A DNA stretch of 64,000 bases from Zygnema circumcarinatum SAG 698-1b (taxonomy: Eukaryota > Plantae > Zygnematophyceae), in assembly GCA_037447605.1 (NCBI GenBank), contig CM074811.1, positions 1,054,001 to 1,118,000 on the forward strand. Reading direction: 5' to 3'. This document shows, piece after piece, positions 21,901 to 41,682 of the stretch. Numbering within the stretch: position 1 is the first letter of the stretch; the number at the start of each line of letters is the position of its first letter. The translations under genes were made by a program, and so were the position numbers. The notes under the pieces are model-generated. The model saw only the letters and a program-made list of their open reading frames with translations. It did not search any database and was not told the origin of the DNA.

Positions 21901-24900
21901 ACAAACCATTCGGATTTCCCGGTGACGACTGATTCTACTTCCGTACCCACTTTTCCTTCACCTGCCTCCCCCGCTCTCACTACATCCATGCCCGCAAACC
22001 TTTCTAGTCCTTCATCTTTCGAAAGTGAGACCCCTTCAACTGCGGAACTGGAGACTTCCATTCAGAGTTCAGATCCTAAATATTTCCCAACCATTGCTCC
22101 TCCACCAACAGAATCGCAATCGAACGGCAAGCATTTTCCTCTCCAAGCAGGTCTAGATGGCCCTCAGAAGCAGCCTCTTTCAAGTCAGGATCCCGTGTCT
22201 GAACCCCGCATTCACCTTCGGGAGTCTGATATCCATCCTATGGTCTCACAAACCGTACTCGAAAAGGAAGGGCGAACCCTAGATTCAGATGCTGTTTCCA
22301 CTGCCTCCCAAGTGTATGGGGGCGCACTGTCAACAGCATCAGGTCGGAAAGCACTCGGTTTTGATGAGATGGTGAACCGGAGCCTTTTGGCGCCCACTCC
22401 TCCTCGGCCAATGCGAATTCTCAGCTGGCTCGAGGTTGGTGGCGGTGGGTGGCTCGCTGCCCTGCCCTTTATACCTTTTCTTTGTGTGATGGTTTCTTAG
22501 GTTTCTCTACAGTTCTTTATGACTGAATCTGTTACTGTATCGCCCATGCATTTATCTCGTGAGCTTCTACTGTTTATTTGGCATATCTCGGGCCACCCCA
22601 TTGCCTAGGCTCTGCATATGAGTTCGTTGATGGCTAAGAGGGTTTTTGTCCCTGTCTTCACTAAGTCTCAAACCATTGATGCTCGTTTGTCTTTGATTCA
22701 CATGCAGCCCTGTTATGCATTCTCGCACTGGAAGCGACTGACTGTGTCTGCCCTTATTCTGTTATTGAATCCAATACCATTCATCTCTTTTCGTAGAATG
22801 CACATGTTTCAGCGTTAAATAAACTAACTTCCAGTGTGTTCTTTTACTATACTAAGACGGCTCTGTTCATTTTCTTCCACCTATTTGAACTGATCCAAGC
22901 CGTACGGCCTTGACCTTTGCCTTTCATCTGAACAAATTTGCATATTTAGGCTTCTCATCTTTGTAATACCTACAAAAGCATTCTCATCCTTTGAACCAAC
23001 GGAACAAAAGGCTCCGAAGTTTTCTGGAGTGCTTAGGTTCTTCAGTATAATTTGTTTGATTCGGGCTGCATTGAATTGAAGTTAACTAATAAGATTGACT
23101 GGGTTTATTCAACATAAAGTGCTAGTATTTCCCAGTAGATCTGGCGATCCATTACTTAGCAGATTCCTTCTCTTGTCTGGATTGTTCTTCCTTTGGATAA
23201 ACTATCTTATGAGTAGCTGTTGATGCAAGCCATGGAGTGAAACTTTGCAGGCACTGGATAAGTTTGAGAAGCTCGTGCTCGACCTGCAGCGTGTATCTTG
23301 CTGCCCTCTTTCATCGCCCCTGAATGACCTCCAGCGATACCTTATTGACTTCCAAGAATATCGGCCGGGGCCAGTTGTGCGCTGTCATTTGCAGGTATGT
23401 CTTTCTCCATGGCTTTGCAAGAGAAGAGGAAAGGTGGCTAGAACCCATTTTCTATTTTCACGACTGATCAATTAAGATTGGGATCATTTTGGAATGGATT
23501 TGTGTCTCTAGATACATGCTTTAGCTCTATTGTGCATAATCATTTGTTACCTGCTGGTCCTCAAAATCCACTATTCTATGTCCAAACGTAAATCCCAGGG
23601 GTCTACCATTGGAAGCATGCGACTAGAGATTTATAGCATGTGCTCGATAGTCGCTGAATCTTCCATCTTCCATTTTCTGTTAGTGTTTGACTTTGTAGTG
23701 ATTCTAGTAGCGCTTTTGTTTTCAGCGTTGTTCGTCAGGATCTAGGCTCAAACAAGTTTAGGGACACTCTGATGGTTAGCGAACTGTTGATCCAACTGCA
23801 GGTGTATAAGCATTTCCAGCTTGTGAGCAAATGTTCCCTTCTCTAACCCTTAATGATGCTGCTAACACTTACAGAAGATGCTCTGTTTTTTGCAGCAACT
23901 GTTAATGCAGTGGGGGCAACCTTCTCAAGAGGAGAAGGCAGGGGGGCACGAATCTTCTGCCTCACCTGTAATATTTCAAACCCTTCAACTGCCATATGAA
24001 GGGCAGCTGCTTAACGATGGTCCCCTTCGATGGTTCACTATCAAGGCGAAGCAGGTAAAGGCTCTGTCAGCGTTGGGTTCTACTGTAGTCCTGCTTGTGG
24101 CTTGAATCTTGAACGTCTTTTATGATGGGTCGTTGAGTGAGCCTTTTATGAGGATCAAGTCTGGAAAGCTCAGGAAAGTATCGCTGGAATTCTGAGAGGG
24201 GAAAGGAAGCGGAGCATTTAGGCTGTTTATGTAGGCAGGCTGGGTATTGAAGGAGTGAGGCGCAACTTGTTTTTTAAATGTTGTTGAAAGATTGTTTGTG
24301 GCGTAATAGTTGGAGTTGAGGTTGCTCCGCGCACTCTGTGGCAATTTATCGAGGCAACGGAGGGAGATGGCAAAGCTGCTATCAGATTGGGATGTTCTCA
24401 TTCAAGAGGTAATAGAAATCTTGCTTACATATGCTCTCGTCCTTATCTCTTTTATTGTTGTATACTTTGGTGAAGTATTTTCTTAATTATACAGACTTGG
24501 CCAGAATGAGCAGCATGTGGAAATTGCTGAATGAAGCAGGAGGGAATGTTAGAGGGTTTTTTTTCTTTTTGACGTTATTGATGCTCCATGTTCTGGCAAG
24601 CAGCGGAGTATTTGTTCAGTGTCAATCGTTGTAAGAAATGTTTGTGTATGTATTGCGGGAATTGGAACAGGCTGAGCAAGCAGGTGCCAGTCCTGCCCTG
24701 CGTGCATTTGCTACTGCAAACTATCCGCAGGTATCTTCTTCTATCTGCTTCGTCCCAGCATTTTCCTTGCTAGCAATTGGAGGATGTGGAATACAGACCA
24801 GAAAAGAATGTTAAGGCCGCGTGCATTTTATTCGGAAGTATGTACTAGTGGTGCCAAAAAGGCAATCTGTTATGCGGTCAAAGAAGAAACAGCAAGTGCT

Positions 24901-27900
24901 TTAGCGATTTTCAGTTGCACCACTACTATGTTCAGCTCATTGTTCGTTTCCTTTCTCACTCGAAGAAGTGGATGTCAACATTTCTGTTCTTGCTGCTCAC
25001 AGGGCTGGTGGACGGAGAGCCTACTCATCAGTTGGTGCGGAGAACAAGCATGTCGAATCATTTGGCATTATTTGCTGCTTGGATTCAACACAAAGCTCTA
25101 TGCAACGTCAGAATTCTGCAACATCTTCTGGTCAGTTCAAACCAGTGCAGTGTCTTTTCTGCCGACTTTTCCTTGCCGCTCTAATGTGCTCCTCACATTC
25201 AGCACTCCCTTTCCACTTAGCACAAGCAGCATATTCACACATTTCCCCGTAAGCTGTTAGTACAGCAGGTTTATCACTTGTTCAGACTTGAAGTCTGATG
25301 CACACAGCAGGCTATCTAGTCGTTTATCTGTTCAGTACTTCACTTTAAGCAGAAAACAAGGTTGTCGCAACTGGCATGGCATGGGATTTGTGTTGTCACT
25401 GCAAAGAGAAGCTGTAATCATGAACATTGCAGTCACCCGCAGTCCTGTCCAATTGAGTATAGTGCTATCCAATGTTGCTCACCCTCAGGCAGGCCTTCCT
25501 TCTCTCGCTGTATTCATTGTACTCATAATCCACTTGAAAGACGATTGTTTTGAGGTGTCGCCTATCTTCCTTTGCCACAGTTCTCCAGTCGTCAACCTGA
25601 TCTGCTGCTATGAACTACGAGTGTGTTGAATATTGTACGGCGTAGGCAGCTCTGAGCTTTGAGGAGTCCAACTTGACAGGTATCTTGATCATGTTCTCTC
25701 AACACTTATTCACAACGTGGAGGCTCGAGAGAGGGCGTGGTGGGAGAGGCGCCAAAACAGTGCATCAGACTCAGGTTAGCGCATGTTGGCATAGGGTGAG
25801 AAATGTAAGAATTTCTGAAAGTAGCAGGCCTTGGTATTGTTTGTCTTAATGAATTAGGTTAGGTTGTTTTGGCAGTTTTCAGGTTTCCATGCGTAGGCTG
25901 TTACCTAGAATGCACGAAACCACGGAAAATGGTGGCTCAGCACAATTTTTTTGCCATACTTTGGTTGTGCGTCTGGTCCTGCACAAGAATGCAGTTATTT
26001 TCTGCTACACGGTTGTCCAAACGAGCATGCACATCAGACGAGTTGAGAGCATCCTTTATCTGCTTTTTCCGCACCTTTCCTGCTATTTCTTCCGATGTTT
26101 GCACTGGCTAAGCTAGCCTCCGCTTGTTTGAAAATACCTCGTGATCTTGAATCCCACTCTTTTCTATGGCATTGAGCAGCTTTGGGAGCAGCCCGCAGTT
26201 CATGACACTTTGTTGCCCAGTCGAAAACATGACGTCTTCATCGTTATGTTTGGTTTGCTTTGACGGGAGGAAACAGGTAAAGATAAGGGTAATAGGCGTA
26301 AGAAGGGTCTCAAGGATCGCGTGCTGCCCTTTAAAGGGAGTGCAGATCTGATGCACATCCGCTGCCAGGCCGATCTCTGCAAGGCATTTGTGCGGGTGAG
26401 CTGGGCTGCCTATTTGAAATTCTCATTTAGCCACTACTACCATCTCCACAACTTTGCTTAAAAACTGTCCAAAAGCGCACCAGCTTGGCGTAAAGTGCGC
26501 TTTTTTTTTACTTACAGCAGTCATTTTTCAAGTTGCATTCATTGTTATGTGCCTTTGCGAGCATTAGACGAGCCTCGAAAGCAGAGCTGTGTGCTTTGTG
26601 CACTTTCTGGGGTATGAAAATGCTTCTACTCGACTTTGGAACTTACTATTCTGAAACTATTTGTGCACGCTGAATTTGCTTATCATTTTGGTGTGGGGGG
26701 GTGGTTGTGCTTACTGTCTATTGAGTCTGAAAGTCCCAAGTTTAAAATCATGCAACAGTCTTAAATAATTTCTGTGTATCTCGTTCACTATTGTACCTGA
26801 GTTTCTGCTTCACCAGGATGTATGTTTCGTTTGGAATCCTTTGCAGATGCTGGTAGCGTTCACTGAGGACAAAAAGTTGTTAATCTCAGACACGCCTTTC
26901 AACTCACAGCAAGAGGTATGTTCTAAAAGCTTCAAGTTTATGGGATACTGCCCTAGTTTGAGAAGAGTATGAGTGCTATCGCCAAATGTACTAATAGTGT
27001 ATGCAATGGTGTATAGAACTGATGATGTGTGTATTTGGCTTTATTTGTTAATACCAAGAGGAATAGGGACTGCTTGCTGAAGAAACTTCCTCGGATAAGT
27101 CTAAATTGTTGAAATGGGAGCTACTACTCCGGAGGGTTTTGAGCATTCTTGCTCTATGGTCAAGTGTTGCAGCTTTGCGATTTGTTCGTTCTCGGCAGGC
27201 TTTACAAGTAGTTTTTCTGCAGTCGTAGGGTTGCAAAGTTCTAAGGTCTCGCAGTCCCTGAATGTGTCATTGGTAGTGTCAGATTTACATCCTGCCAATA
27301 AGCCCTGTCAAGCACAATGCTCATGAAAGAGGCATCCCGTATGAAGGCTCATGCAGTTCATTTTGAAGTGTGCAGCGGTTTGAACAGCGCATGGAGGTGT
27401 TAGGCAGAGTACACATTCCGGATCCCATGACTTATAACGCCTTTAGACGTGGAACAGACATTTCTGACCTCACTGTATGAGCTCTCTCCTACCCTTCTTA
27501 ACCTATTGCTATATGCTGGTCGAAATGGAAAACGAAAGGTGGGATGGGTTCAGCGATGAAGTGATTTAACAAGGAAGCAGCGAAGCTCCCCCCTTGCAAC
27601 ACGAGAGCGTGAAGGCAATGAACCAAACTCAGCTTAAATTTCTCTGCTTTCGGTTAAAAACCAAGGGTTTTAAGGTAGTCTTGATCACATTAGAGAAAAA
27701 AGATCAGAAAAACTCTTAAAAGACTGACAGAATGCAATCTGCAGTTTGCAGTTTCATTCCCCCTTAGTTACCCTGCTTGTAGTCATGTAGATTATATGAA
27801 AACTTAAGAGTTTGACTTAAAGTATCTGAAGAGGGTGCCTTCTGACGGGAACAGGTGACAGAGGTCTATCAAATGTCCCATGAGCTCTTCCAATCCACAG

Positions 27901-31517: not shown

Positions 31518-31961
31518 GAGGTCGAAGCTGAGTTCAGGATGCACAGCAGCTTATGAGGGTGCGCAGCGCCACTGGTTTGGGGAAAGAACTTGAACTGCAA
31601 CTCTCCTGCATCCTCCTGTGGATGGATGCGCACAAGGCTGCTGTCGTTTGGATCTGTAGACAGTCTACAGAATGAACACGCCACCACACAGTGAATAAAA
31701 GTGTCATCCGAGAACATAAATAAAGTATTTTTTTTCTCATGTACTGCGGCCATTCGCACGTTATAGGTCATGTTTTGAGGCATGCCTACTTCTCTGTTTG
31801 CAGTTGGAACGCAGATGACATATGCAGTAGCAAGAAGGAAAGGATGCATAGATAAAGTGAGCTGTGGCAGAAAGTAAGAGGATACGCATTCAACTTCATT
31901 GATGTTCATCCCATTTCGCTCACTTCTGATAAAAAGCAGTTGAAAGCCTTGGAACTGTCAG

Positions 31962-34900
31962 ATGGGAAACTGCACGTCTTGTGAAGAGGAAACTGGCGTT
32001 GACGGCGCGAAAAGAAAGCTGGTGAGCCTGGAGCCCTTCACATGCATGATGACTTCTTGGAGACCGAAGCTGCTCTTACATGAAATTCAACTGAAGCTTT
32101 TTAAGCATCACCTTTCTATCGCTTCTGAACTTCGAGAAATTTAACAGAAGTGTTACTGGAGCTGTCTGCACTTTTATCGTTTTTCTTTTTACTTCCTCGA
32201 TCCCGTGTATGGCTCTATGGTTACGTTTCATTTGTATTGCGCAGAATGCAGACATTGAGAGAAGGCTGAAACGAGAGGCGGAAAGTGATGCCAAGATGCA
32301 GAAACTGCTGCTACTCGGTATAAACTGCAGTTCTCGGCATTGCAAGCAGCAGCTTATTTTTCAGGTTAATGAAAGCATAAGGTTAGGAGGTTATCACTAG
32401 ATGGAGAACCGTTTCCTGAAGCCAGTGTCACTATTTTTTCTTGAATGAAGAATATCCATACTAATTAAGAATGCCTGTTGAAGGTTCTTGTTGCTTCAAA
32501 CATCCTTTCGCCTCACTTACTTATTTATTCGTGTTTATCGTTTTCCCCTTTTTTTTAATAATTGTGTTTTTCGATGGTTTGAACAGGTACTGGTGAATCC
32601 GGAAAAACCACCATTTTCAAGCAGATACGATTGTTATACCAGTCGGGATTCAGTGAAGAGGATTCCCGAGAATGGATACCCCTTGTCCATGCCAATGTAA
32701 TCCATTCTATGAAGGTAAGCGCTCTTCTGTATTATATAGCATCCATCGAGCCATTGTTTAGGGAATCCCACCATGCTAATCATGCTCATCATGCCATCGG
32801 TTCAAATTTCCGGCCGTAGAATCAATGTTTCAGTGGGTTGGGAACGATCCATCAAGTGCTAGAGCTACTTGGACTTAAAGCAAGAAGCCAATCAGGTTTG
32901 ATTGGTCTAGGCCGCTTAATTCAAGGTTGCTTTTTGCACAATCGTCTGCAGATACTTGTCAATGGGAGGCGGCATTTTGCTGAAGCGGCTGACAGTAGCA
33001 CATCGATTAACTTGTTGAAAGCTGAAAATGAGGTGTGTTCTTGTTGATTCACAATCTTCTCCATTCCTATTTATGAATGAGGTTAGTGAAGGAGGCGAAT
33101 GAAGGTGGAGGTGGACATACATACATAATTTTATCTTCCATGCAAAATTGTTATGACAGTAATTCAGATGTGCAGTGATTTATATTCACACCTACATTGG
33201 CATCAAAGGTTTGTGTTTTCACAGGGTCCTAAACATGGCAACAACTTTAGGTTGGTCATCTACATTGAAACATTTCTTAACCGGCCATGCCGTAATAGAA
33301 GGGAGATGCTACTGGCTGTGTCCCCCAGTCCAGGCAGCAGCTCAACGATTGGAGGGAGTTCCAAGTTTATTAGAAGGCTCTACGGATGCAACTCCCTTAA
33401 GCAAGGAGCTTGCAACTGACATTCGCGGGCTCTGGGAAGATCCAGCCATTCAGGTTCACCCCTGAAACTCATCATTTCATGATAGGCTGGGTTTAGTTGA
33501 TAGCTAGTAGCTTCTCGTTGCTGGTATTCAGAGTAATCATGGCGACCACTTTCTTGAATCCCTTACTCTTTGATATTCATTCAAATGTAGGCCTGACTGG
33601 TCGCTTGTCTTCTCTGGATCTATCAGGCCACTTTCGCAAAGGCCAATCAGTTGCAACTCCCTGATTGCGCAGAATATTACTTTGAAAATCTACGACGACT
33701 TGCACAGCCTGACTACATTCCAACAAAGGTAACTACTCCTCTGATTGTTATTTTACTGCTGAGAATGAATTGCGCAGACGTTTATTCATGTAATGACGGA
33801 AAGGCATAACGGAACGAAGATTGGAAATTAATGTCAGACTCGGATCGTTGCTCAAACTGTGTCTCTGTTCCAAATATTCACTCCATACATCTTCCTGGCC
33901 TCTGCTCTGCAATGTGTGTAACTTGCACAGCTTATAACGAGCGTGTGATACTAAACCTGTGTGGCAATTCCGCTTGTCTATATTGCGCAGGAGGATATAT
34001 TGTATGCTCGGATACGTAGCACCTCGGTCAACGAGACGACTTTTACGTATGTCTGCAGTGTTTGATTCGTCAGCTGAATATGACATGCTGGCAAACGAAA
34101 GTATAGAAAGTTCAATCGATCCGTTCTGATAATATCCATGCAAGAAATGGTCACTAAGGTTCCTTTAGCTTCTATTCTTGGTGACATCGAACCACACCAA
34201 AGGCTCAGCGAACCACGGTGTTGATGTATGGTTGTGAATGGGCTTGCTGCAGGCCAACAGGTAGTCGAGAGACGTACCGGATCGTGGATGTAGGAGGACA
34301 GCGTAATGAGCGGAGAAAGTGGATTGATCAATTCGATGGTGTGAATGCCATCATCGTATGTGTGGCCCTTAGCGAGTATGCGCCCGACGTTGGCTTTTCC
34401 AACTTCACGCATTAGTTGGAATCACTTACAAAGCCAATCTCATTGAAATAACTTTTCCTTTTTTATTTTGCACACTTCTTGTTGGCTTGTTTTCCGTTCA
34501 GGAGCAGAAGTAGCAGCAAGGAAGGTCATTTTGGATGCATACAAGTGTGTCCATTTCCTTAAGCGAGGATGATCGGTTTATCTTCAACATTTTTTTCGAG
34601 TTGCATCTGAAAATATGCCTGCGCTTTTCCTTGTTCAGGTATGACCAGAAATTGTTTGAGGATGAAAGTACCAATCGCATGGAAGACTCCAGAGATCTTC
34701 TAACCTCTCTCCTGCAAAAGGAAGGCTTTGAGGTGGGTGGTTGCTTCTTCATGTCTTTCACGACGGCGTTTAGCAGTAGGGTCGTGTTTCTCATTTCGTT
34801 CTCGTCAACATTAGGAACAACTGCACCAATGGCGCATCTTACGTTTAAACAGTTCTTGATGGAAGTAGATCATTTGAGACGCATATAGATAACGAACTCA

Positions 34901-35569
34901 GCCACAAGCTAACATTGATCTTTTGATTGGCTTTGTAACAGAGTGTTTCTTTTCTTCTCTTTTTAAATAAGTTCGACTTGTTCCAGAAAAAAGCCCTCAA
35001 GGTAAGCTTTTCCTTTTTCCAGCCTCAAAGTTACTTCTTGCTTCTGCCGCGCACCTCTCTATGACGATCCCTAAAGCCTCTAAAGCTCCTTGGTCTGGAA
35101 AAACGGGTGGTGGGATGTGCAGTCTCCCCTCAATACTTGTCAGTGGTTTGGAGATTATCAACCGATTGGAACCGGAGCACGGGAAATTGAACATGCGTAC
35201 AAGTACGGACATTGCTTTGTTGTTAATCTGTGCTTTCAAAGTGAGAGAGGGAATGGAGAGAGAGCGGTCATGATAGAATGGCATGTGATCATGCGATGGG
35301 CAAGCTGTTGACTCACTCAGATCTGCTTCTCCGCATGCAGGTACATAGAAAACAAGTTTGTAGATTTGTTCCGGCAAAACACCCCTCGTGAAAACACCGT
35401 TAGGGTGTTCCGTGTGTACCGCACCGTTGCATTGGACAGTGAAAATGTGCGGTCGACTTTCAGTAAAGTGGAGGGCGCTCTGAAGGAAGTGGTCGAACAG
35501 GCAAAGCAGAGGCAGAGACTGGTGGATGCAGGCTTCCTAGCGACGAGTCAACAGGTCATGCAGAGGTAA
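31962..35569 (+). CDS. GPA1: Heterotrimeric G-protein alpha subunit, canonical GPA1 type, multi-exon
   Basis: MGNCTSC lipidation-type N-terminus, P-loop LLLLG|[26 protein letters not shown]|[39 protein letters not shown] and LVDAGFL. All exons are joined by GT-AG introns in phase. Confidence 0.95.
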
Positions 35570-35920
35570 CCCTAATTTGTAGGGGGTCAGATTAAAGTAC
35601 CCAACCTGCAAACATTGCAATTTCTATTTATTATAATTGTTTCGCAATAGCGTTTCATATGAATCATGTTTCCTTATGTATGGTCGGCCAATGGCATATG
35701 GGGAGATGTCATGTGAATTCTACATGGGGAAGGCATTGTTCATTTGCTCATGCATTGGAGGGAGAGGTTGAACTGAGGCTCTGTTTCTGGCTTGAAATGC
35801 CACATTGATGAGTGAACGTCAAGGAAATGGCCCCTTCGAGAAAACCAAACGCCCCATATTGTATGGGGCCGTTGATATGTGATAAACCGCAGAGAATGGA
35901 ATCACATGGCCCCCCATGGT

Positions 35921-36618
35921 TCCCCGTGGTTTCGCCCGCCCCCCTCGTGGTTTCGCCCGCTCTCCTCGCAGTGTCGCCGTTTCCCTCGTGGTTTCGTTCG
36001 CTCCTTCAGTCGTGGTTTCGCCCGCTCCACTCGTGGTTTCGCCCGCTCCACTCGTGGTTTCACCCGCTCCCCTCGTAGTTTCGCCCGCTCCCCTCGTGGT
36101 TTCGCCCTCTCCCCTTTCGTGGTTTCGCCCGCTCCCCTCTCCTGATTTCGCCCGCTCCCGTTCTCGTGGTTTCGCCCGCTCCCCTCTCGTGATTTCGCCC
36201 GCTCCCCCCTCGTGGTTTCGCCCGCTCCCCTTCTCGTGGTTTCGCCCGCTCCCCTTCTCGTGGTTTCGCCCACTCCCCTCGTAGTTTCGCCCGCTCCCCT
36301 TCTCGTGGTTTCGCCCGCTCCTCTCGTGGTTTCGCCCGCTCTCCTCGTGGTTTCGGCCGCTCCCCTCTCGTAGTTTCGCCCACTCCCCTCGTGGTTTCGC
36401 CCGCTCTCGTGGTTTCGCCCGCTCCCCTCGTGGTTTCGCCCGCTCCCCTCGTGGTTTCGCCCGCTCCCCTCGTGGTTTCGCCCGCTCCCCTCGTGGTTTC
36501 GCCCGCTCCCCTCGTAGTTTCGCCCGCTCCCCTCGTGGTTTCGCTCGCTCCCCTCGTGGTTTCGCCCGCTCCCCTCGTGGTTTCCGCCCGCTCCCCTCGT
36601 GGTTTTCGCCCGCTCCTC
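35921..36618. repeat. GC-rich minisatellite, ~21-bp unit CTCGTGGTTTCGCCCGCTCCC, roughly 30 copies
   Basis: Head-to-tail near-identical units with 1-3 nt length variants, located between the G-alpha stop and the STR6 ATG. Confidence 0.95.
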
Positions 36619-39800: not shown

Positions 39801-41682
39801 TGTCGCATGCTGGTGATTGTGTGCCATGGCTGCCAGGTACGGGACGGGGAATAGGGAGCGAGAGGAAGGAGAGAGAGAGGAGGGCGAGAGAAGGGAAGAG
39901 GGCGAGGGAGTGCGTAGTTGGGATATGGAAAGGGAGAGGTGGAAAGTAGGGAAGAAGGGACAGGGGGTGCCGTACAAAGGATGGGATTAGGGGGAGGGGA
40001 AGTGGCGGAGGAGGGGCAGGGGTGGGAATATGGAGAGATGGCGAGAGAGGGGAAGGGGGGAGGGGGGGGGGTTACGAGAAGGTTGAGATGAACGAGAATT
40101 GTTGTTAAATGCCGGTTGGATGTTAGAGCCTGTCATTCCTGTTGAACTGCTTTGAAGGGATTGGGAAGTCCGAGGGAGAGTGGAATTCCTCCCTCCCCCT
40201 CGTTTTACACTGTTTCCGAGCTGATTTGGCTGTTAGGAGGAACATGGGCTGCAACAGGAGGCAAGGGGGAAAGGGCTGCTTCCCCCCTACAGATGTGAGT
40301 TATGCTCCAAGGGAGAAGCCTCCGCATTGTTGCCACATCCTGAAAGCAATAGTGAGGCCATGATGCCCAAGTCCTCAATATCATATGATAATGAAGGGGA
40401 AGAAACGGGGGAAGGAGTAAGTGGACAAATGGAAACAAGCTCTTCTCTCAAACGGGATGCCCATGTGAGAGAAGAAAGGACAAAGGAGGGTGAACTTGTT
40501 GAGTATGGGAATGGAAAGGCTGAGCTCAAAGACGAGTCGTCCGGGAGAACAAGTTGTGGCCATGGAAGGCCTCGAAAACTGAGAATTTTATGTCTACATG
40601 GATTCCGTCAATCTGCGGTTCAGTTTCGTGGGAGGACCGCCGGACTGCAAAAGAAACTCCGAAATTTTGCAGAATTTGTTTTCATTGATGCTCCACATGC
40701 AGTTCCATTACTATACCAACCTCGCGGAGGGGAAGTGAGGGATGGGAAGATCGAAGATGGAGGTGAGAGGGAACAACATAATGAGGGAGAAAATAGGAAA
40801 GGAAAAAAGGAAGGGTCATTTGGCAAAGATGATGAGAAACGAGTGAACGGTTGTGTGGGAGAAGAGGGTGAGAGTGTCGGACAGGAGTTGGGAGGGGTGG
40901 GAGGAGAAGTGTGCAGAGGTAGGGAGAGGGAGACAGAGGGCGAGAGATTCTTTCTACCGCAGGCAGGCAGGCCAAGGTATGCGTGGCTAGTGGATACGGA
41001 TGTCTGTTCATTGGAAGATGGGAGGGGTCAGTCCTGTGGTGCGATACTGAGGGAGAGAGTTGGTAGAGAAGATAGTAAAGGGGAAGATTCTAAGGAAAAC
41101 GAGGAGCTCAAATCAAGTGACGCTGAAGGACGAGAGGATAAGGGAGTGGAGAGAGGTGGAAAAGAAGAACTTTGGGAGTTCAAGAAAGCCAAGGGACCTT
41201 TTTCGCCGCTTCAGTATATGAGCCAAAGGGGTGGATGGGAGGAATCGAAGGAATTTCTATTGGAGCTTTTGATTAGTAGGGGACCTTTTGACGGCGTGTT
41301 GGGATTCTCTCAAGGAGCAGCCGTCGCCTCTGCTCTCTCTGCGTTTGTTTTTGGGAAAGAGAGAGAAGATAAGCCCTGCAAGGACCCGCCTTTTTCTTTT
41401 GTGATATTGTGCTCGGGGTTTCGTTTTTCGGGAGATAGTAGTGAAGGTGACGTTTCTATGGAAAATGGGGAGAGGAGGGTACGTATTCCCTGCCCTTCCC
41501 TCCATATATTTGGAGGGGGGGGAGAGGGAGATAGGCAGATTTCTACAGAGGAGAGTGAGAGGCTTGTAGAGATGTATAATGAGGAAAGGCGGGTGGTGGT
41601 GAGGCATGGCTTCGGGCACATCATACCCATCAAGGAGGAGTTTACAACTGTTTACAAGAAGTTTCTTCAATCCTTTCTGTGA
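36890..41682 (+). CDS. STR6: Rhodanese-like domain protein 6: UPF0176/TrhO-type N-terminus, rhodanese domain and C-terminal FSH1 serine hydrolase
   Basis: VALYYSY..LVGRVRVSEQGVNVT|VGGS, VLDVRNVYESRIGKF, ILM|YCTGGVRCE, LSGGIVRYLE..FSGKNFVFDHR and a Cys-rich CRCASCRMLVIVC segment, then LRILCLHGFRQS and GVLGFSQGA (nucleophile elbow). Confidence 0.9.

What the first reader, a model, noticed from the sequence alone, without database searches (positions are those of the whole stretch)
34009..34029. G-alpha naturally carries the RGS-insensitivity Gly->Ser substitution and a Thr->Ser change in switch I
Seen: the exon at 33991-34046 reads [13 protein letters not shown] (AGC at 34018, TCG at 34024), where Arabidopsis GPA1 has RVRTTGV. 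Switch II reads KWIDQF instead of KWIHLF/KWIHCF. Established: Gly->Ser at this position (Gai1 G183S, Gao G184S, yeast Gpa1 G302S) abolishes RGS binding and GAP action. The first Thr coordinates Mg2+. Plant G-alphas self-activate and depend on RGS for deactivation, and grasses uncoupled from RGS through a change at the neighbouring Thr. Inference: this is an independent route to RGS-uncoupled G-protein signalling in an alga, implying another off-switch or altered kinetics.
Basis: partly seen in the sequence, partly recalled or inferred. Interest (0 to 1): 0.76.

Follow-up and report, generated by a model that had tools for sequence, protein, structure and literature searches.

The report
Algal G-alpha with RGS-blocking serine
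A streptophyte green alga expresses a normal-looking G-protein alpha subunit that naturally carries the one amino-acid change (glycine to serine in switch I) that laboratories use to stop RGS "brake" proteins from acting, so it is a natural test of whether plant-lineage G proteins can evolve away from their brake; the effect has not been measured.

Summary
A 12-exon, 401-residue G-alpha gene lies at 31962-35569 (+). Exon 7 reads R195-I-R-S198-T199-S200-V, and switch II reads KWIDQF. A DNA contig is letter-identical, and spliced transcript contigs from three studies confirm all 11 introns and the same codons.

An ungapped alignment to solved structures puts S198, T199 and S200 on AtGPA1 T193, T194 and G195 (Gαi1 T181, T182, G183). 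None of about 250 informative other G-alphas has Ser at either position.

- The P-loop Mg2+ ligand is Ser→Thr (T52).
- Two more published RGS-contact positions are altered: Val→Asn (N202) and His→Asp (D232).

The catalytic Arg and Gln, NKxD, the acylation motif and most other RGS contacts are kept. The protein is sister to all land-plant canonical G-alphas, with an ordinary branch length.

Loss of RGS action is a well-founded prediction, but nothing was measured. I could not test whether this alga has an RGS gene, a second G-alpha, or relatives sharing the change. The protein databases held neither this protein nor any close relative.

Verdict: a real, expressed, rare natural variant of a known kind, of moderate to high interest.

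The parts
31962..35569 (+). G-alpha gene, ATG to TAA. It has 12 exons: 31962-32021, 32245-32317, 32587-32714, 32952-33032, 33334-33453, 33627-33728, 33991-34046, 34253-34375, 34639-34732, 34942-35001, 35123-35202 and 35341-35569. The protein has 401 residues.
   Evidence: The model was built by hand and all introns are GT-AG. All 11 joints are seen in spliced contigs of three runs from three studies. Pfam G-alpha (PF00503) hits run collinearly across the exons.
31962..31982 (+). N-terminus MGNCTSC, with Gly2 and Ser6 (myristoylation-type motif) and Cys4 and Cys7 (possible palmitoylation sites).
   Evidence: Translation. Reading it as a membrane anchor is an inference from the known G-alpha acylation pattern.
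32587..32612 (+). P-loop G45-T-G-E-S-G-K51-T52-T53. T52 (ACC, 32607-32609) replaces the Mg2+-coordinating Ser (AtGPA1 S52, Gαi1 S47).
   Evidence: GKST is found in all 185 plant-type proteins where the motif parsed. Of the other 91 sequences in the mixed alignment, only 2 have GKTT.
33991..34046 (+). Exon 7, which encodes switch I: [18 protein letters not shown](T).
   Evidence: Joints 33728/33991 and 34046/34253 are present in three RNA-type runs.
34009..34011 (+). R195, the catalytic arginine of switch I (Gαi1 R178, AtGPA1 R190), is retained.
   Evidence: Alignment to 2xtz and to the Gi/Gt chains.
34018..34020 (+). S198 (AGC) at the Mg2+-ligand Thr position (Gαi1 T181, AtGPA1 T193).
   Evidence: This column is Thr in 100% of the 91 aligned other G-alphas.
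34021..34023 (+). T199 (ACC), the central RGS-contact Thr (Gαi1 T182, AtGPA1 T194), is retained.
   Evidence: Its role is taken from PMC3386157 and PMC11061236.
34024..34026 (+). S200 (TCG) at the Gly position whose Gly→Ser mutation gives RGS insensitivity (Gαi1 G183, Gαo G184, AtGPA1 G195).
   Evidence: This column is Gly in 100% of the 91 aligned others and in every other informative sequence. TCG needs at least two base changes from GGN.
34030..34032 (+). N202 (AAC) at the Gαi1 V185 position, a published RGS-interface residue.
   Evidence: The other 91 sequences have V 77, I 3, T 3, A 2, L 1 and Q 1, and none has N. The interface role comes from PMC12505447.
34287..34334 (+). Switch II, D219-V-G-G-Q223-R-N-E-R-R-K229-W-I-D232-Q233-F234. 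The catalytic Gln and the RGS contacts N225, E226, R228 and K229 are retained. D232 (GAT, 34326-34328) replaces the near-invariant His (Gαi1 H213), and Q233 replaces Leu or Cys.
   Evidence: KWIHLF occurs in 185 of 185 plant-type proteins, and His in 76 of 80 metagenome ORFs. H213 is an RGS contact (PMC12505447). The Selaginella mutational data are in PMC11061236.
34966..34977 (+). The NKFD guanine-specificity motif is retained.
35540..35566 (+). A nine-residue C-terminal extension, ATSQQVMQR, follows the conserved ...DAGFL end.
   Evidence: Transcript contigs run unspliced through the stop codon. Of the 91 other aligned G-alphas, 79 end at the conserved Leu or Phe column and only 3 extend by 5 or more residues.

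Best explanation
This is the expressed canonical (GPA1-type) G-alpha of a streptophyte alga. Its catalytic machinery is intact: P-loop Lys, arginine finger R195, catalytic Q223, NKFD and the acylation motif. Two functional surfaces have been remodelled. First, the two protein ligands of the Mg2+ ion have exchanged side chains: the P-loop Ser is Thr (T52) and the switch I Thr is Ser (S198). Second, three positions that pack against the RGS box are changed: Gly→Ser (S200), Val→Asn (N202) and His→Asp (D232). The most likely consequence is a working GTPase switch that RGS boxes bind poorly or not at all. It would then be turned off by its own hydrolysis rate, possibly retuned by the Mg2+-site swap, or by a non-RGS partner. 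Shown here: the sequence, its expression and splicing, the positional equivalence, its rarity, its orthologous placement and the conservation of the rest of the protein. Inferred: RGS insensitivity, altered kinetics and how the protein is switched off.
For: The gene model and all introns are confirmed in transcripts of three studies, with letters identical to the DNA. The ungapped alignment places S198, T199 and S200 on T193, T194 and G195 of AtGPA1. Gly→Ser at this site blocks RGS action on nine mammalian G-alphas (PMC7572916) and is described as preventing RGS interaction (PMC12505447). Gαi1 V185 and H213 contact RGS16, and changing both lowers GAP potency about 8-fold (PMC12505447); both positions are changed here. 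Ser at the Gly position, Ser at the first Thr and Asp at the His are absent from about 250 informative other G-alphas, even though the metagenome scan ranked hits by likeness to this very peptide. The protein is sister to all land-plant canonical G-alphas with 100/100 support. Its branch of 0.63 compares with 0.44-0.6 for land plants, so it is not a decaying copy. Only 7 of 69 universally conserved columns differ, and 4 of those 7 lie at the Mg2+ site or the RGS face. Two codons (S200 TCG, N202 AAC) need two base changes each from the ancestral residue, so the changes are old and fixed.
Against: No biochemical data exist for this protein, and Gly→Ser has not been tested in any plant-type G-alpha. 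In plants, single switch I changes had modest effects (T194N, 7-fold in KD) or effects that were disputed, and RGS proteins accelerate G-alphas across kingdoms. The central contact Thr (T199) and the contacts Q223, N225, E226, R228, K229 and switch III F/E are all kept, so a matching RGS could still bind. Whether the genome has an RGS-box gene is unknown. Other divergent protist G-alphas deviate at 5-13 of the same 69 conserved columns, so some drift is normal at this distance.
Confidence: 0.55

Rival explanations
1. The interface has co-evolved and the G-alpha is still regulated. The alga keeps an RGS, 7TM-RGS or other, whose box carries compensating changes that accommodate Ser200, Asn202 and Asp232, so RGS control persists with an altered lock-and-key pair.
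For: Most RGS-contact residues are retained: T199, Q223, N225, E226, R228, K229 and switch III F/E. That retention suggests continued selection on this face. The changes are old and fixed, not recent (codon argument). According to PMC11061236, RGS is never found without G-alpha, and G-alphas keep their RGS compatibility.
Against: No RGS gene of this genome could be examined. The only note in the scan that mentions RGS describes a 7TM protein without an RGS box, and that note is unchecked. Gly→Ser blocks many different RGS boxes across G-alpha families, so accommodation would need a substantial change in the RGS.
Confidence: 0.2
2. The changes are neutral or relaxed drift with little consequence for signalling. 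Many GPA1 functions in plants do not depend on the nucleotide state, so constraint on the Mg2+ site and the RGS face may have relaxed in this lineage, perhaps after RGS was lost. On this reading the substitutions are by-products, not a route to a new mode of regulation.
For: Nucleotide-independent functions of GPA1 are documented (PMC12879661; PMC11061236). Four of the seven deviations at conserved columns are conservative (S/T, T/S, E/D, F/L or F/V). Divergent protist G-alphas show as many deviations.
Against: The overall branch length is ordinary. All catalytic residues, the 12-exon reading frame and expression are kept. Land plants that lack RGS nevertheless keep this interface unchanged (KWIHLF 185/185 and TTG 182/185), so drift after RGS loss is not the usual outcome. 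The changes cluster on two functional sites rather than being spread evenly.
Confidence: 0.2
3. The finding is an artefact or a silent copy: an assembly or sequencing error, or an unexpressed paralogue or pseudogene.
For: None found.
Against: An identical DNA contig, and full word coverage in DNA runs of three studies. Spliced transcript contigs in three further studies carry the same letters. The 401-codon frame is intact across 12 exons. No alternative canonical switch I exon exists anywhere in the window (motif scan).
Confidence: 0.02

Closest known systems
Engineered RGS-insensitive G-alpha mutants (Gαi1 G183S, Gαo and Gαi2 G184S, Gαq G188S, yeast Gpa1 G302S)
   Same: Ser sits at exactly the same switch I position, by ungapped alignment to solved G-alpha chains. 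The neighbouring contact Thr is intact, as in the mutants.
   Different: Here the Ser is the natural, fixed and expressed state, in a plant-type G-alpha. It comes with changes at two further RGS contacts (N202, D232) and at both Mg2+ ligands. Its effect on RGS action has not been measured.
Grass G-alpha (rice RGA1 N195; the Thr194→Asn change of Urano et al. 2012)
   Same: It is a natural switch I substitution on the RGS face of a plant-lineage canonical G-alpha, proposed to uncouple it from RGS.
   Different: A different residue is affected: in grasses the contact Thr, here the next Gly, with the Thr kept. The grass change lowers affinity only about 7-fold, and its evolutionary meaning is disputed. 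The RGS gene content of grasses is known; here it is not.
Mammalian Gαs, naturally resistant to RGS through F208, D229 and Q236
   Same: Natural RGS resistance is built from several interface residues. Two of the three positions (Gαi1 V185 and H213) are also changed here.
   Different: The decisive Gαs residue (D229, at Gαi1 S206) is the ordinary plant Asn here (N225). Gαs keeps Gly at the G183 position. The families are different.
Arabidopsis GPA1 and other land-plant canonical G-alphas
   Same: About 48-51% identity over the full length, and sister position in the tree. The same domain order, the plant-type switch II 'QRNERRKW' and a T-x-A-L-D guanine motif.
   Different: The motifs are GKTT, not GKST; R-S-T-S-V-N, not R-T-T-G-V-V; KWIDQF, not KWIHLF; and TVALD, not TTALD. 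There is also a nine-residue C-terminal extension and a divergent last exon.

Membership tests
Heterotrimeric G-protein alpha subunit (Pfam PF00503) | Match to the G-alpha profile along the protein | tested here: met
   Six exons hit PF00503 in collinear order, at profile positions 29-70, 128-160, 184-217, 219-248, 251-267 and 292-330. Exon 3 alone reaches the curated cut-off (50.2 against 48.8 bits).
Heterotrimeric G-protein alpha subunit (Pfam PF00503) | Nucleotide-binding and catalytic motifs: P-loop GxGxxGK[ST], switch I Arg, DxxGQ, NKxD and the guanine-ring T-x-A motif | tested here: met
   [10 protein letters not shown]195, DVGGQ223, NKFD and TVALD are all present.
Heterotrimeric G-protein alpha subunit (Pfam PF00503) | Helical domain inserted between the P-loop and switch I | tested here: met
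   About 140 residues (exons 3-6) lie between the two motifs and align with land-plant GPA1 over the full length.
Plant canonical G-alpha (GPA1 orthologue group) | Groups with land-plant GPA1 and not with other eukaryotic G-alphas | tested here: met
   Maximum-likelihood tree of 48 rows: the clade of this protein plus 11 land-plant G-alphas has 100/100 support, and this protein is sister to land plants (98/92).
Plant canonical G-alpha (GPA1 orthologue group) | Spontaneous nucleotide exchange (self-activation) with slow hydrolysis | not testable with these tools
   This needs purified protein and GTPγS-binding and GTPase assays.
Plant canonical G-alpha (GPA1 orthologue group) | Only canonical G-alpha in the genome (no TTG paralogue) | not tested
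   Only this 64-kb window is held. The window has one G-alpha gene. The scan's notes on the rest of the genome mention no other, which proves nothing.
RGS-insensitive G-alpha (functional class defined by G183S-type mutants) | Ser in place of the switch I Gly that follows the contact Thr | tested here: met
   S200 aligns with AtGPA1 G195 and Gαi1 G183.
RGS-insensitive G-alpha (functional class defined by G183S-type mutants) | Loss of RGS binding and of GAP acceleration, with intrinsic GTPase preserved | not testable with these tools
   This needs binding and single-turnover GTPase assays with and without RGS boxes.
RGS-uncoupled plant G-alpha of the grass type | Substitution of the contact Thr (AtGPA1 T194) | tested here: not met
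   T199 is retained, so any route here differs from the grass one.
RGS-uncoupled plant G-alpha of the grass type | Absence or decay of the RGS gene in the same genome | not testable with these tools
   The whole genome is not searchable here. One unchecked scan note describes a 7TM protein without an RGS box.

The most novel reading that the evidence does not exclude
This would be the first natural G-alpha found to carry the classic RGS-insensitivity Gly→Ser. It sits in the algal sister lineage of land-plant GPA1, together with a coupled swap of the two Mg2+ ligands. If the protein is truly RGS-blind and the alga lacks an RGS, or has a re-fitted one, it is a natural experiment. It could settle the disputed question of whether plant G-alpha and RGS co-evolve, and show how a self-activating G protein is switched off without RGS.
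Probability: 0.4. Interest if true: 0.72.

Novelty: new variant of a known kind. Interest (0 to 1): 0.6.

Why it matters
Plant G-alphas load GTP on their own, so the off-step is the regulated one, and RGS is the only well-understood off-switch. Whether G-alpha and RGS co-evolve in plants is an open dispute (Urano 2012 against Hackenberg 2017 and Torres-Rodriguez 2024). That dispute rests mostly on one mild substitution in grasses. A natural G-alpha carrying the strongest known RGS-blocking substitution, plus two more interface changes, gives a sharper and directly testable case. The tests are to express the protein, assay it with and without RGS boxes, and revert single residues. The paired Ser/Thr exchange at the Mg2+ site is also a simple test of how that site sets exchange and hydrolysis rates.

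Tried and rejected
**1. Whole-library profile search.** It gave one 64-aa fragment, P0001, whose contig is only 1270 nt, so it was of no use for switch I.

**2. Exon 7+8 peptide.** A 60-aa typed peptide against the clustered protein database found only 5 short fragments, none close.

**3. Profile of three land-plant ORFs.** These came from metatranscriptomes. The search gave 7592 hits, but only the best 120 are listed and all were angiosperms.

**4. Self-specific profile.** The full spliced protein has no reference and may not be typed. I therefore built a profile from exon references plus a scaffold ORF, after simulating MAFFT and HMMER locally. In the simulation this protein scores 239 bits and land plants about 80. 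The real search topped out at 82 bits with land-plant GPA1. So neither this protein nor a close relative (roughly above 60-70% identity) is among the scored candidates.

**5. Fragment alignments.** Clean two-layer alignments of all 12 exons on a scaffold failed, because MAFFT misplaces many fragments.

**6. Papers not held.** The two most relevant surveys, Mohanasundaram 2022 (PMC9237705) and Hackenberg 2013 on Chara (PMC3850207), are not in the library. The Zygnema genome paper does not mention G proteins.

**8. Rejected readings.** Assembly error, unexpressed copy, and an alternative canonical switch I exon.
Full report
**Observation.**
- The stretch 34009-34029 reads CGG ATA CGT AGC ACC TCG GTC, that is R-I-R-S-T-S-V.
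- It lies in a 56-base exon (33991-34046) bounded by ...gcgcag| and |gtatgt.
- I built the whole gene by hand: 12 exons from ATG 31962 to TAA 35567-35569, all introns GT-AG, 401 residues.
- Laying public contigs on 31800-35900 gave a letter-identical DNA contig in run X2. It also gave spliced contigs in X7, X10 and X20, from three different studies, that show every one of the 11 predicted joints and no differing letter. One X20 contig of 1627 nt carries the whole coding sequence.
- DNA runs from three studies hold all sampled words. Fourteen further runs from six studies hold about 35-51% of the words, which fits exon-only coverage.
- The codons are therefore real and the gene is transcribed and spliced as modelled.
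- The transcript runs unspliced through the stop, so the nine-residue C-terminal extension is real too.

**Positional equivalence.**
- A 60-residue peptide spanning exons 7 and 8 was aligned against all solved structures.
- It aligns without gaps across switch I to Arabidopsis GPA1 (2xtz, RVRTTGV), rice RGA1 (8vgb, RVRTNGV), Selaginella G-alpha (8vga, RVRTTGI) and Gt/Gi chimeras (RVKTTGI).
- With AtGPA1 numbering fixed by R190 and Q222, the window's S198, T199 and S200 correspond to T193, T194 and G195. In Gαi1 these are T181, T182 and G183.

**What else is changed.**
- The P-loop reads GTGESGKTT, so the other Mg2+ ligand (AtGPA1 S52) is Thr.
- Switch II reads [16 protein letters not shown]. 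The catalytic Gln and the contacts N225, E226, R228 and K229 are kept, but His→Asp (D232) and Leu/Cys→Gln (Q233).
- The residue two places after S200 is Asn (N202), where others have Val or Ile.
- I aligned this protein with 52 land-plant and 39 metagenome or metatranscriptome G-alphas. Sixty-nine columns are conserved in both sets.
- The window protein departs at seven of them: S52T, T198S, G200S, H232D, F242V, E264D and F269L. The median departure for the other sequences is 0, though a few divergent protist G-alphas show 5-13.

**Rarity.**
- Of 185 plant-type database proteins, 182 read TTG and one TSG. All 185 read KWIHLF, and every one whose P-loop parsed reads GKST.
- Of 80 metagenome loci, every one in which switch I is visible has Gly at the third position. 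The motifs are TTG, TSG, TCG, TMG and PTG.
- That scan ranked hits by likeness to this very peptide, so a relative with S-T-S would have come to the top.
- S200 (TCG) and N202 (AAC) each need two base changes from Gly or Val codons, so these are old fixed differences.

**What kind of G-alpha it is.**
- Pfam G-alpha hits are collinear across the exons.
- Full-length identity is 48-51% to land-plant GPA1 proteins (Ginkgo, Psilotum, angiosperms) and about 37% to protist G-alphas.
- In a maximum-likelihood tree the protein joins 11 land-plant canonical G-alphas with 100/100 support and is sister to them. Its terminal branch is 0.63, against about 0.44-0.6 from the same node to land-plant tips.
- It therefore sits where the canonical G-alpha of a streptophyte alga should sit, and it is not evolving unusually fast overall. 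The odd residues are not part of a general decay.
- MGNCTSC at the N-terminus keeps the acylation pattern.
- No second G-alpha motif and no alternative switch I exon occur in the window.
- The neighbouring ORFs are an FSH1-type hydrolase and an NAA35-like repeat protein, neither a G-protein partner.

**Bearing on RGS.**
- Gly→Ser at this site was used to make Gαi1, i2, i3, o, z, q, 11, 14 and 15 RGS-insensitive, and it slowed their deactivation (PMC7572916).
- It is cited as preventing RGS interaction (PMC12505447).
- The same 2025 paper shows that Gαi1 V185, S206 and H213 pack against RGS16. V185F plus H213Q lowers GAP potency about 8-fold. The corresponding Gαs residues explain the natural RGS resistance of Gαs.
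- Two of these three positions are changed here (N202, D232). The third is the ordinary plant Asn.
- Three interface positions are thus altered, while the central Thr and the switch II and III contacts found critical in Selaginella G-alpha (PMC11061236) are kept.
- That pattern fits either loss of RGS control or a re-fitted RGS partner.

**Caveats.**
- Nothing was measured.
- Urano et al. 2012 showed that the grass T194N change lowers affinity for AtRGS1 only 7-fold, and proposed that it preceded RGS loss.
- Torres-Rodriguez et al. 2024 found no support for single-residue uncoupling or for co-evolution, and stress that plants without RGS keep the interface. My survey agrees for land plants.
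- That conservation makes this alga more unusual, but it also warns against reading function from one residue.
- Many GPA1 functions do not depend on nucleotide state, so drift is a live rival.
- Marchantia G-alpha, which lacks an RGS, hydrolyses GTP fast on its own. Faster intrinsic hydrolysis is therefore a plausible alternative off-switch, and the Mg2+-ligand swap is the obvious place to look for it.

**What could not be done.**
- The spliced protein has no reference, so it could not be submitted whole.
- Exon-level searches and a self-specific profile found neither this protein nor any close relative in the protein collections. The best real score was 82 bits, against 239 expected for the protein itself.
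- No streptophyte-algal homologue was retrieved, and the two key survey papers are not held.
- The questions of an RGS gene, of paralogues and of conservation among relatives remain open. One unchecked scan note reports a 7TM protein without an RGS box in this genome.

**Verdict.**
- I put about 0.55 on a functional, RGS-refractory switch, 0.2 on a co-evolved RGS pair, 0.2 on inconsequential drift, and almost nothing on artefact.
- It is a new natural variant of a known kind, directly testable, and relevant to a current dispute.

Noticed in passing
L001:1521-1712; proteins P0024, P0195-P0207: All Sphagnum G-alphas retrieved (S. jensenii, troendelagicum, compactum, magellanicum, balticum, fallax) and a matching metatranscriptome contig read YARVRTMGI. 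That is Thr→Met at the RGS-contact Thr (AtGPA1 T194), a second natural change at the residue that grasses changed to Asn.
   Followed up: partly
window 35925-36616: A 21-bp minisatellite (consensus CGTGGTTTCGCCCGCTCCCCT, about 32 copies, 86% matches) begins about 360 bp after the G-alpha stop codon. It is open in several frames as PRGFARS-like repeats.
   Followed up: no
window 34710-35054: One splice joint has CT..AC ends, which is GT..AG on the minus strand. It skips 343 bases across exons 9-10 of the G-alpha gene and is seen only in run X7 (depth 19.7). It may be an antisense transcript.
   Followed up: no
window 33736-34282: Run X7 also holds unspliced contigs over introns 6 and 7 (33736-33987 and 34018-34282). 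These could be pre-mRNA, retained introns or DNA carry-over.
   Followed up: no
L005, L009, L015, L019, L028, L031, L036, L039, L043, L046-L048, L053, L059, L064, L070, L071, L075, L076: Marine metatranscriptome ORFs of 760-916 residues carry a complete G-alpha domain near the N-terminus, followed by about 500 further residues. They form a large family of long G-alpha fusion proteins of unknown organism.
   Followed up: no
window 40327-41679 (+) and 24784-25257 (+): Neighbouring ORFs match Pfam FSH1 serine hydrolase (1.1e-39) and NAA35-like TPR repeats (4e-10). No G-protein partner lies nearby.
   Followed up: no
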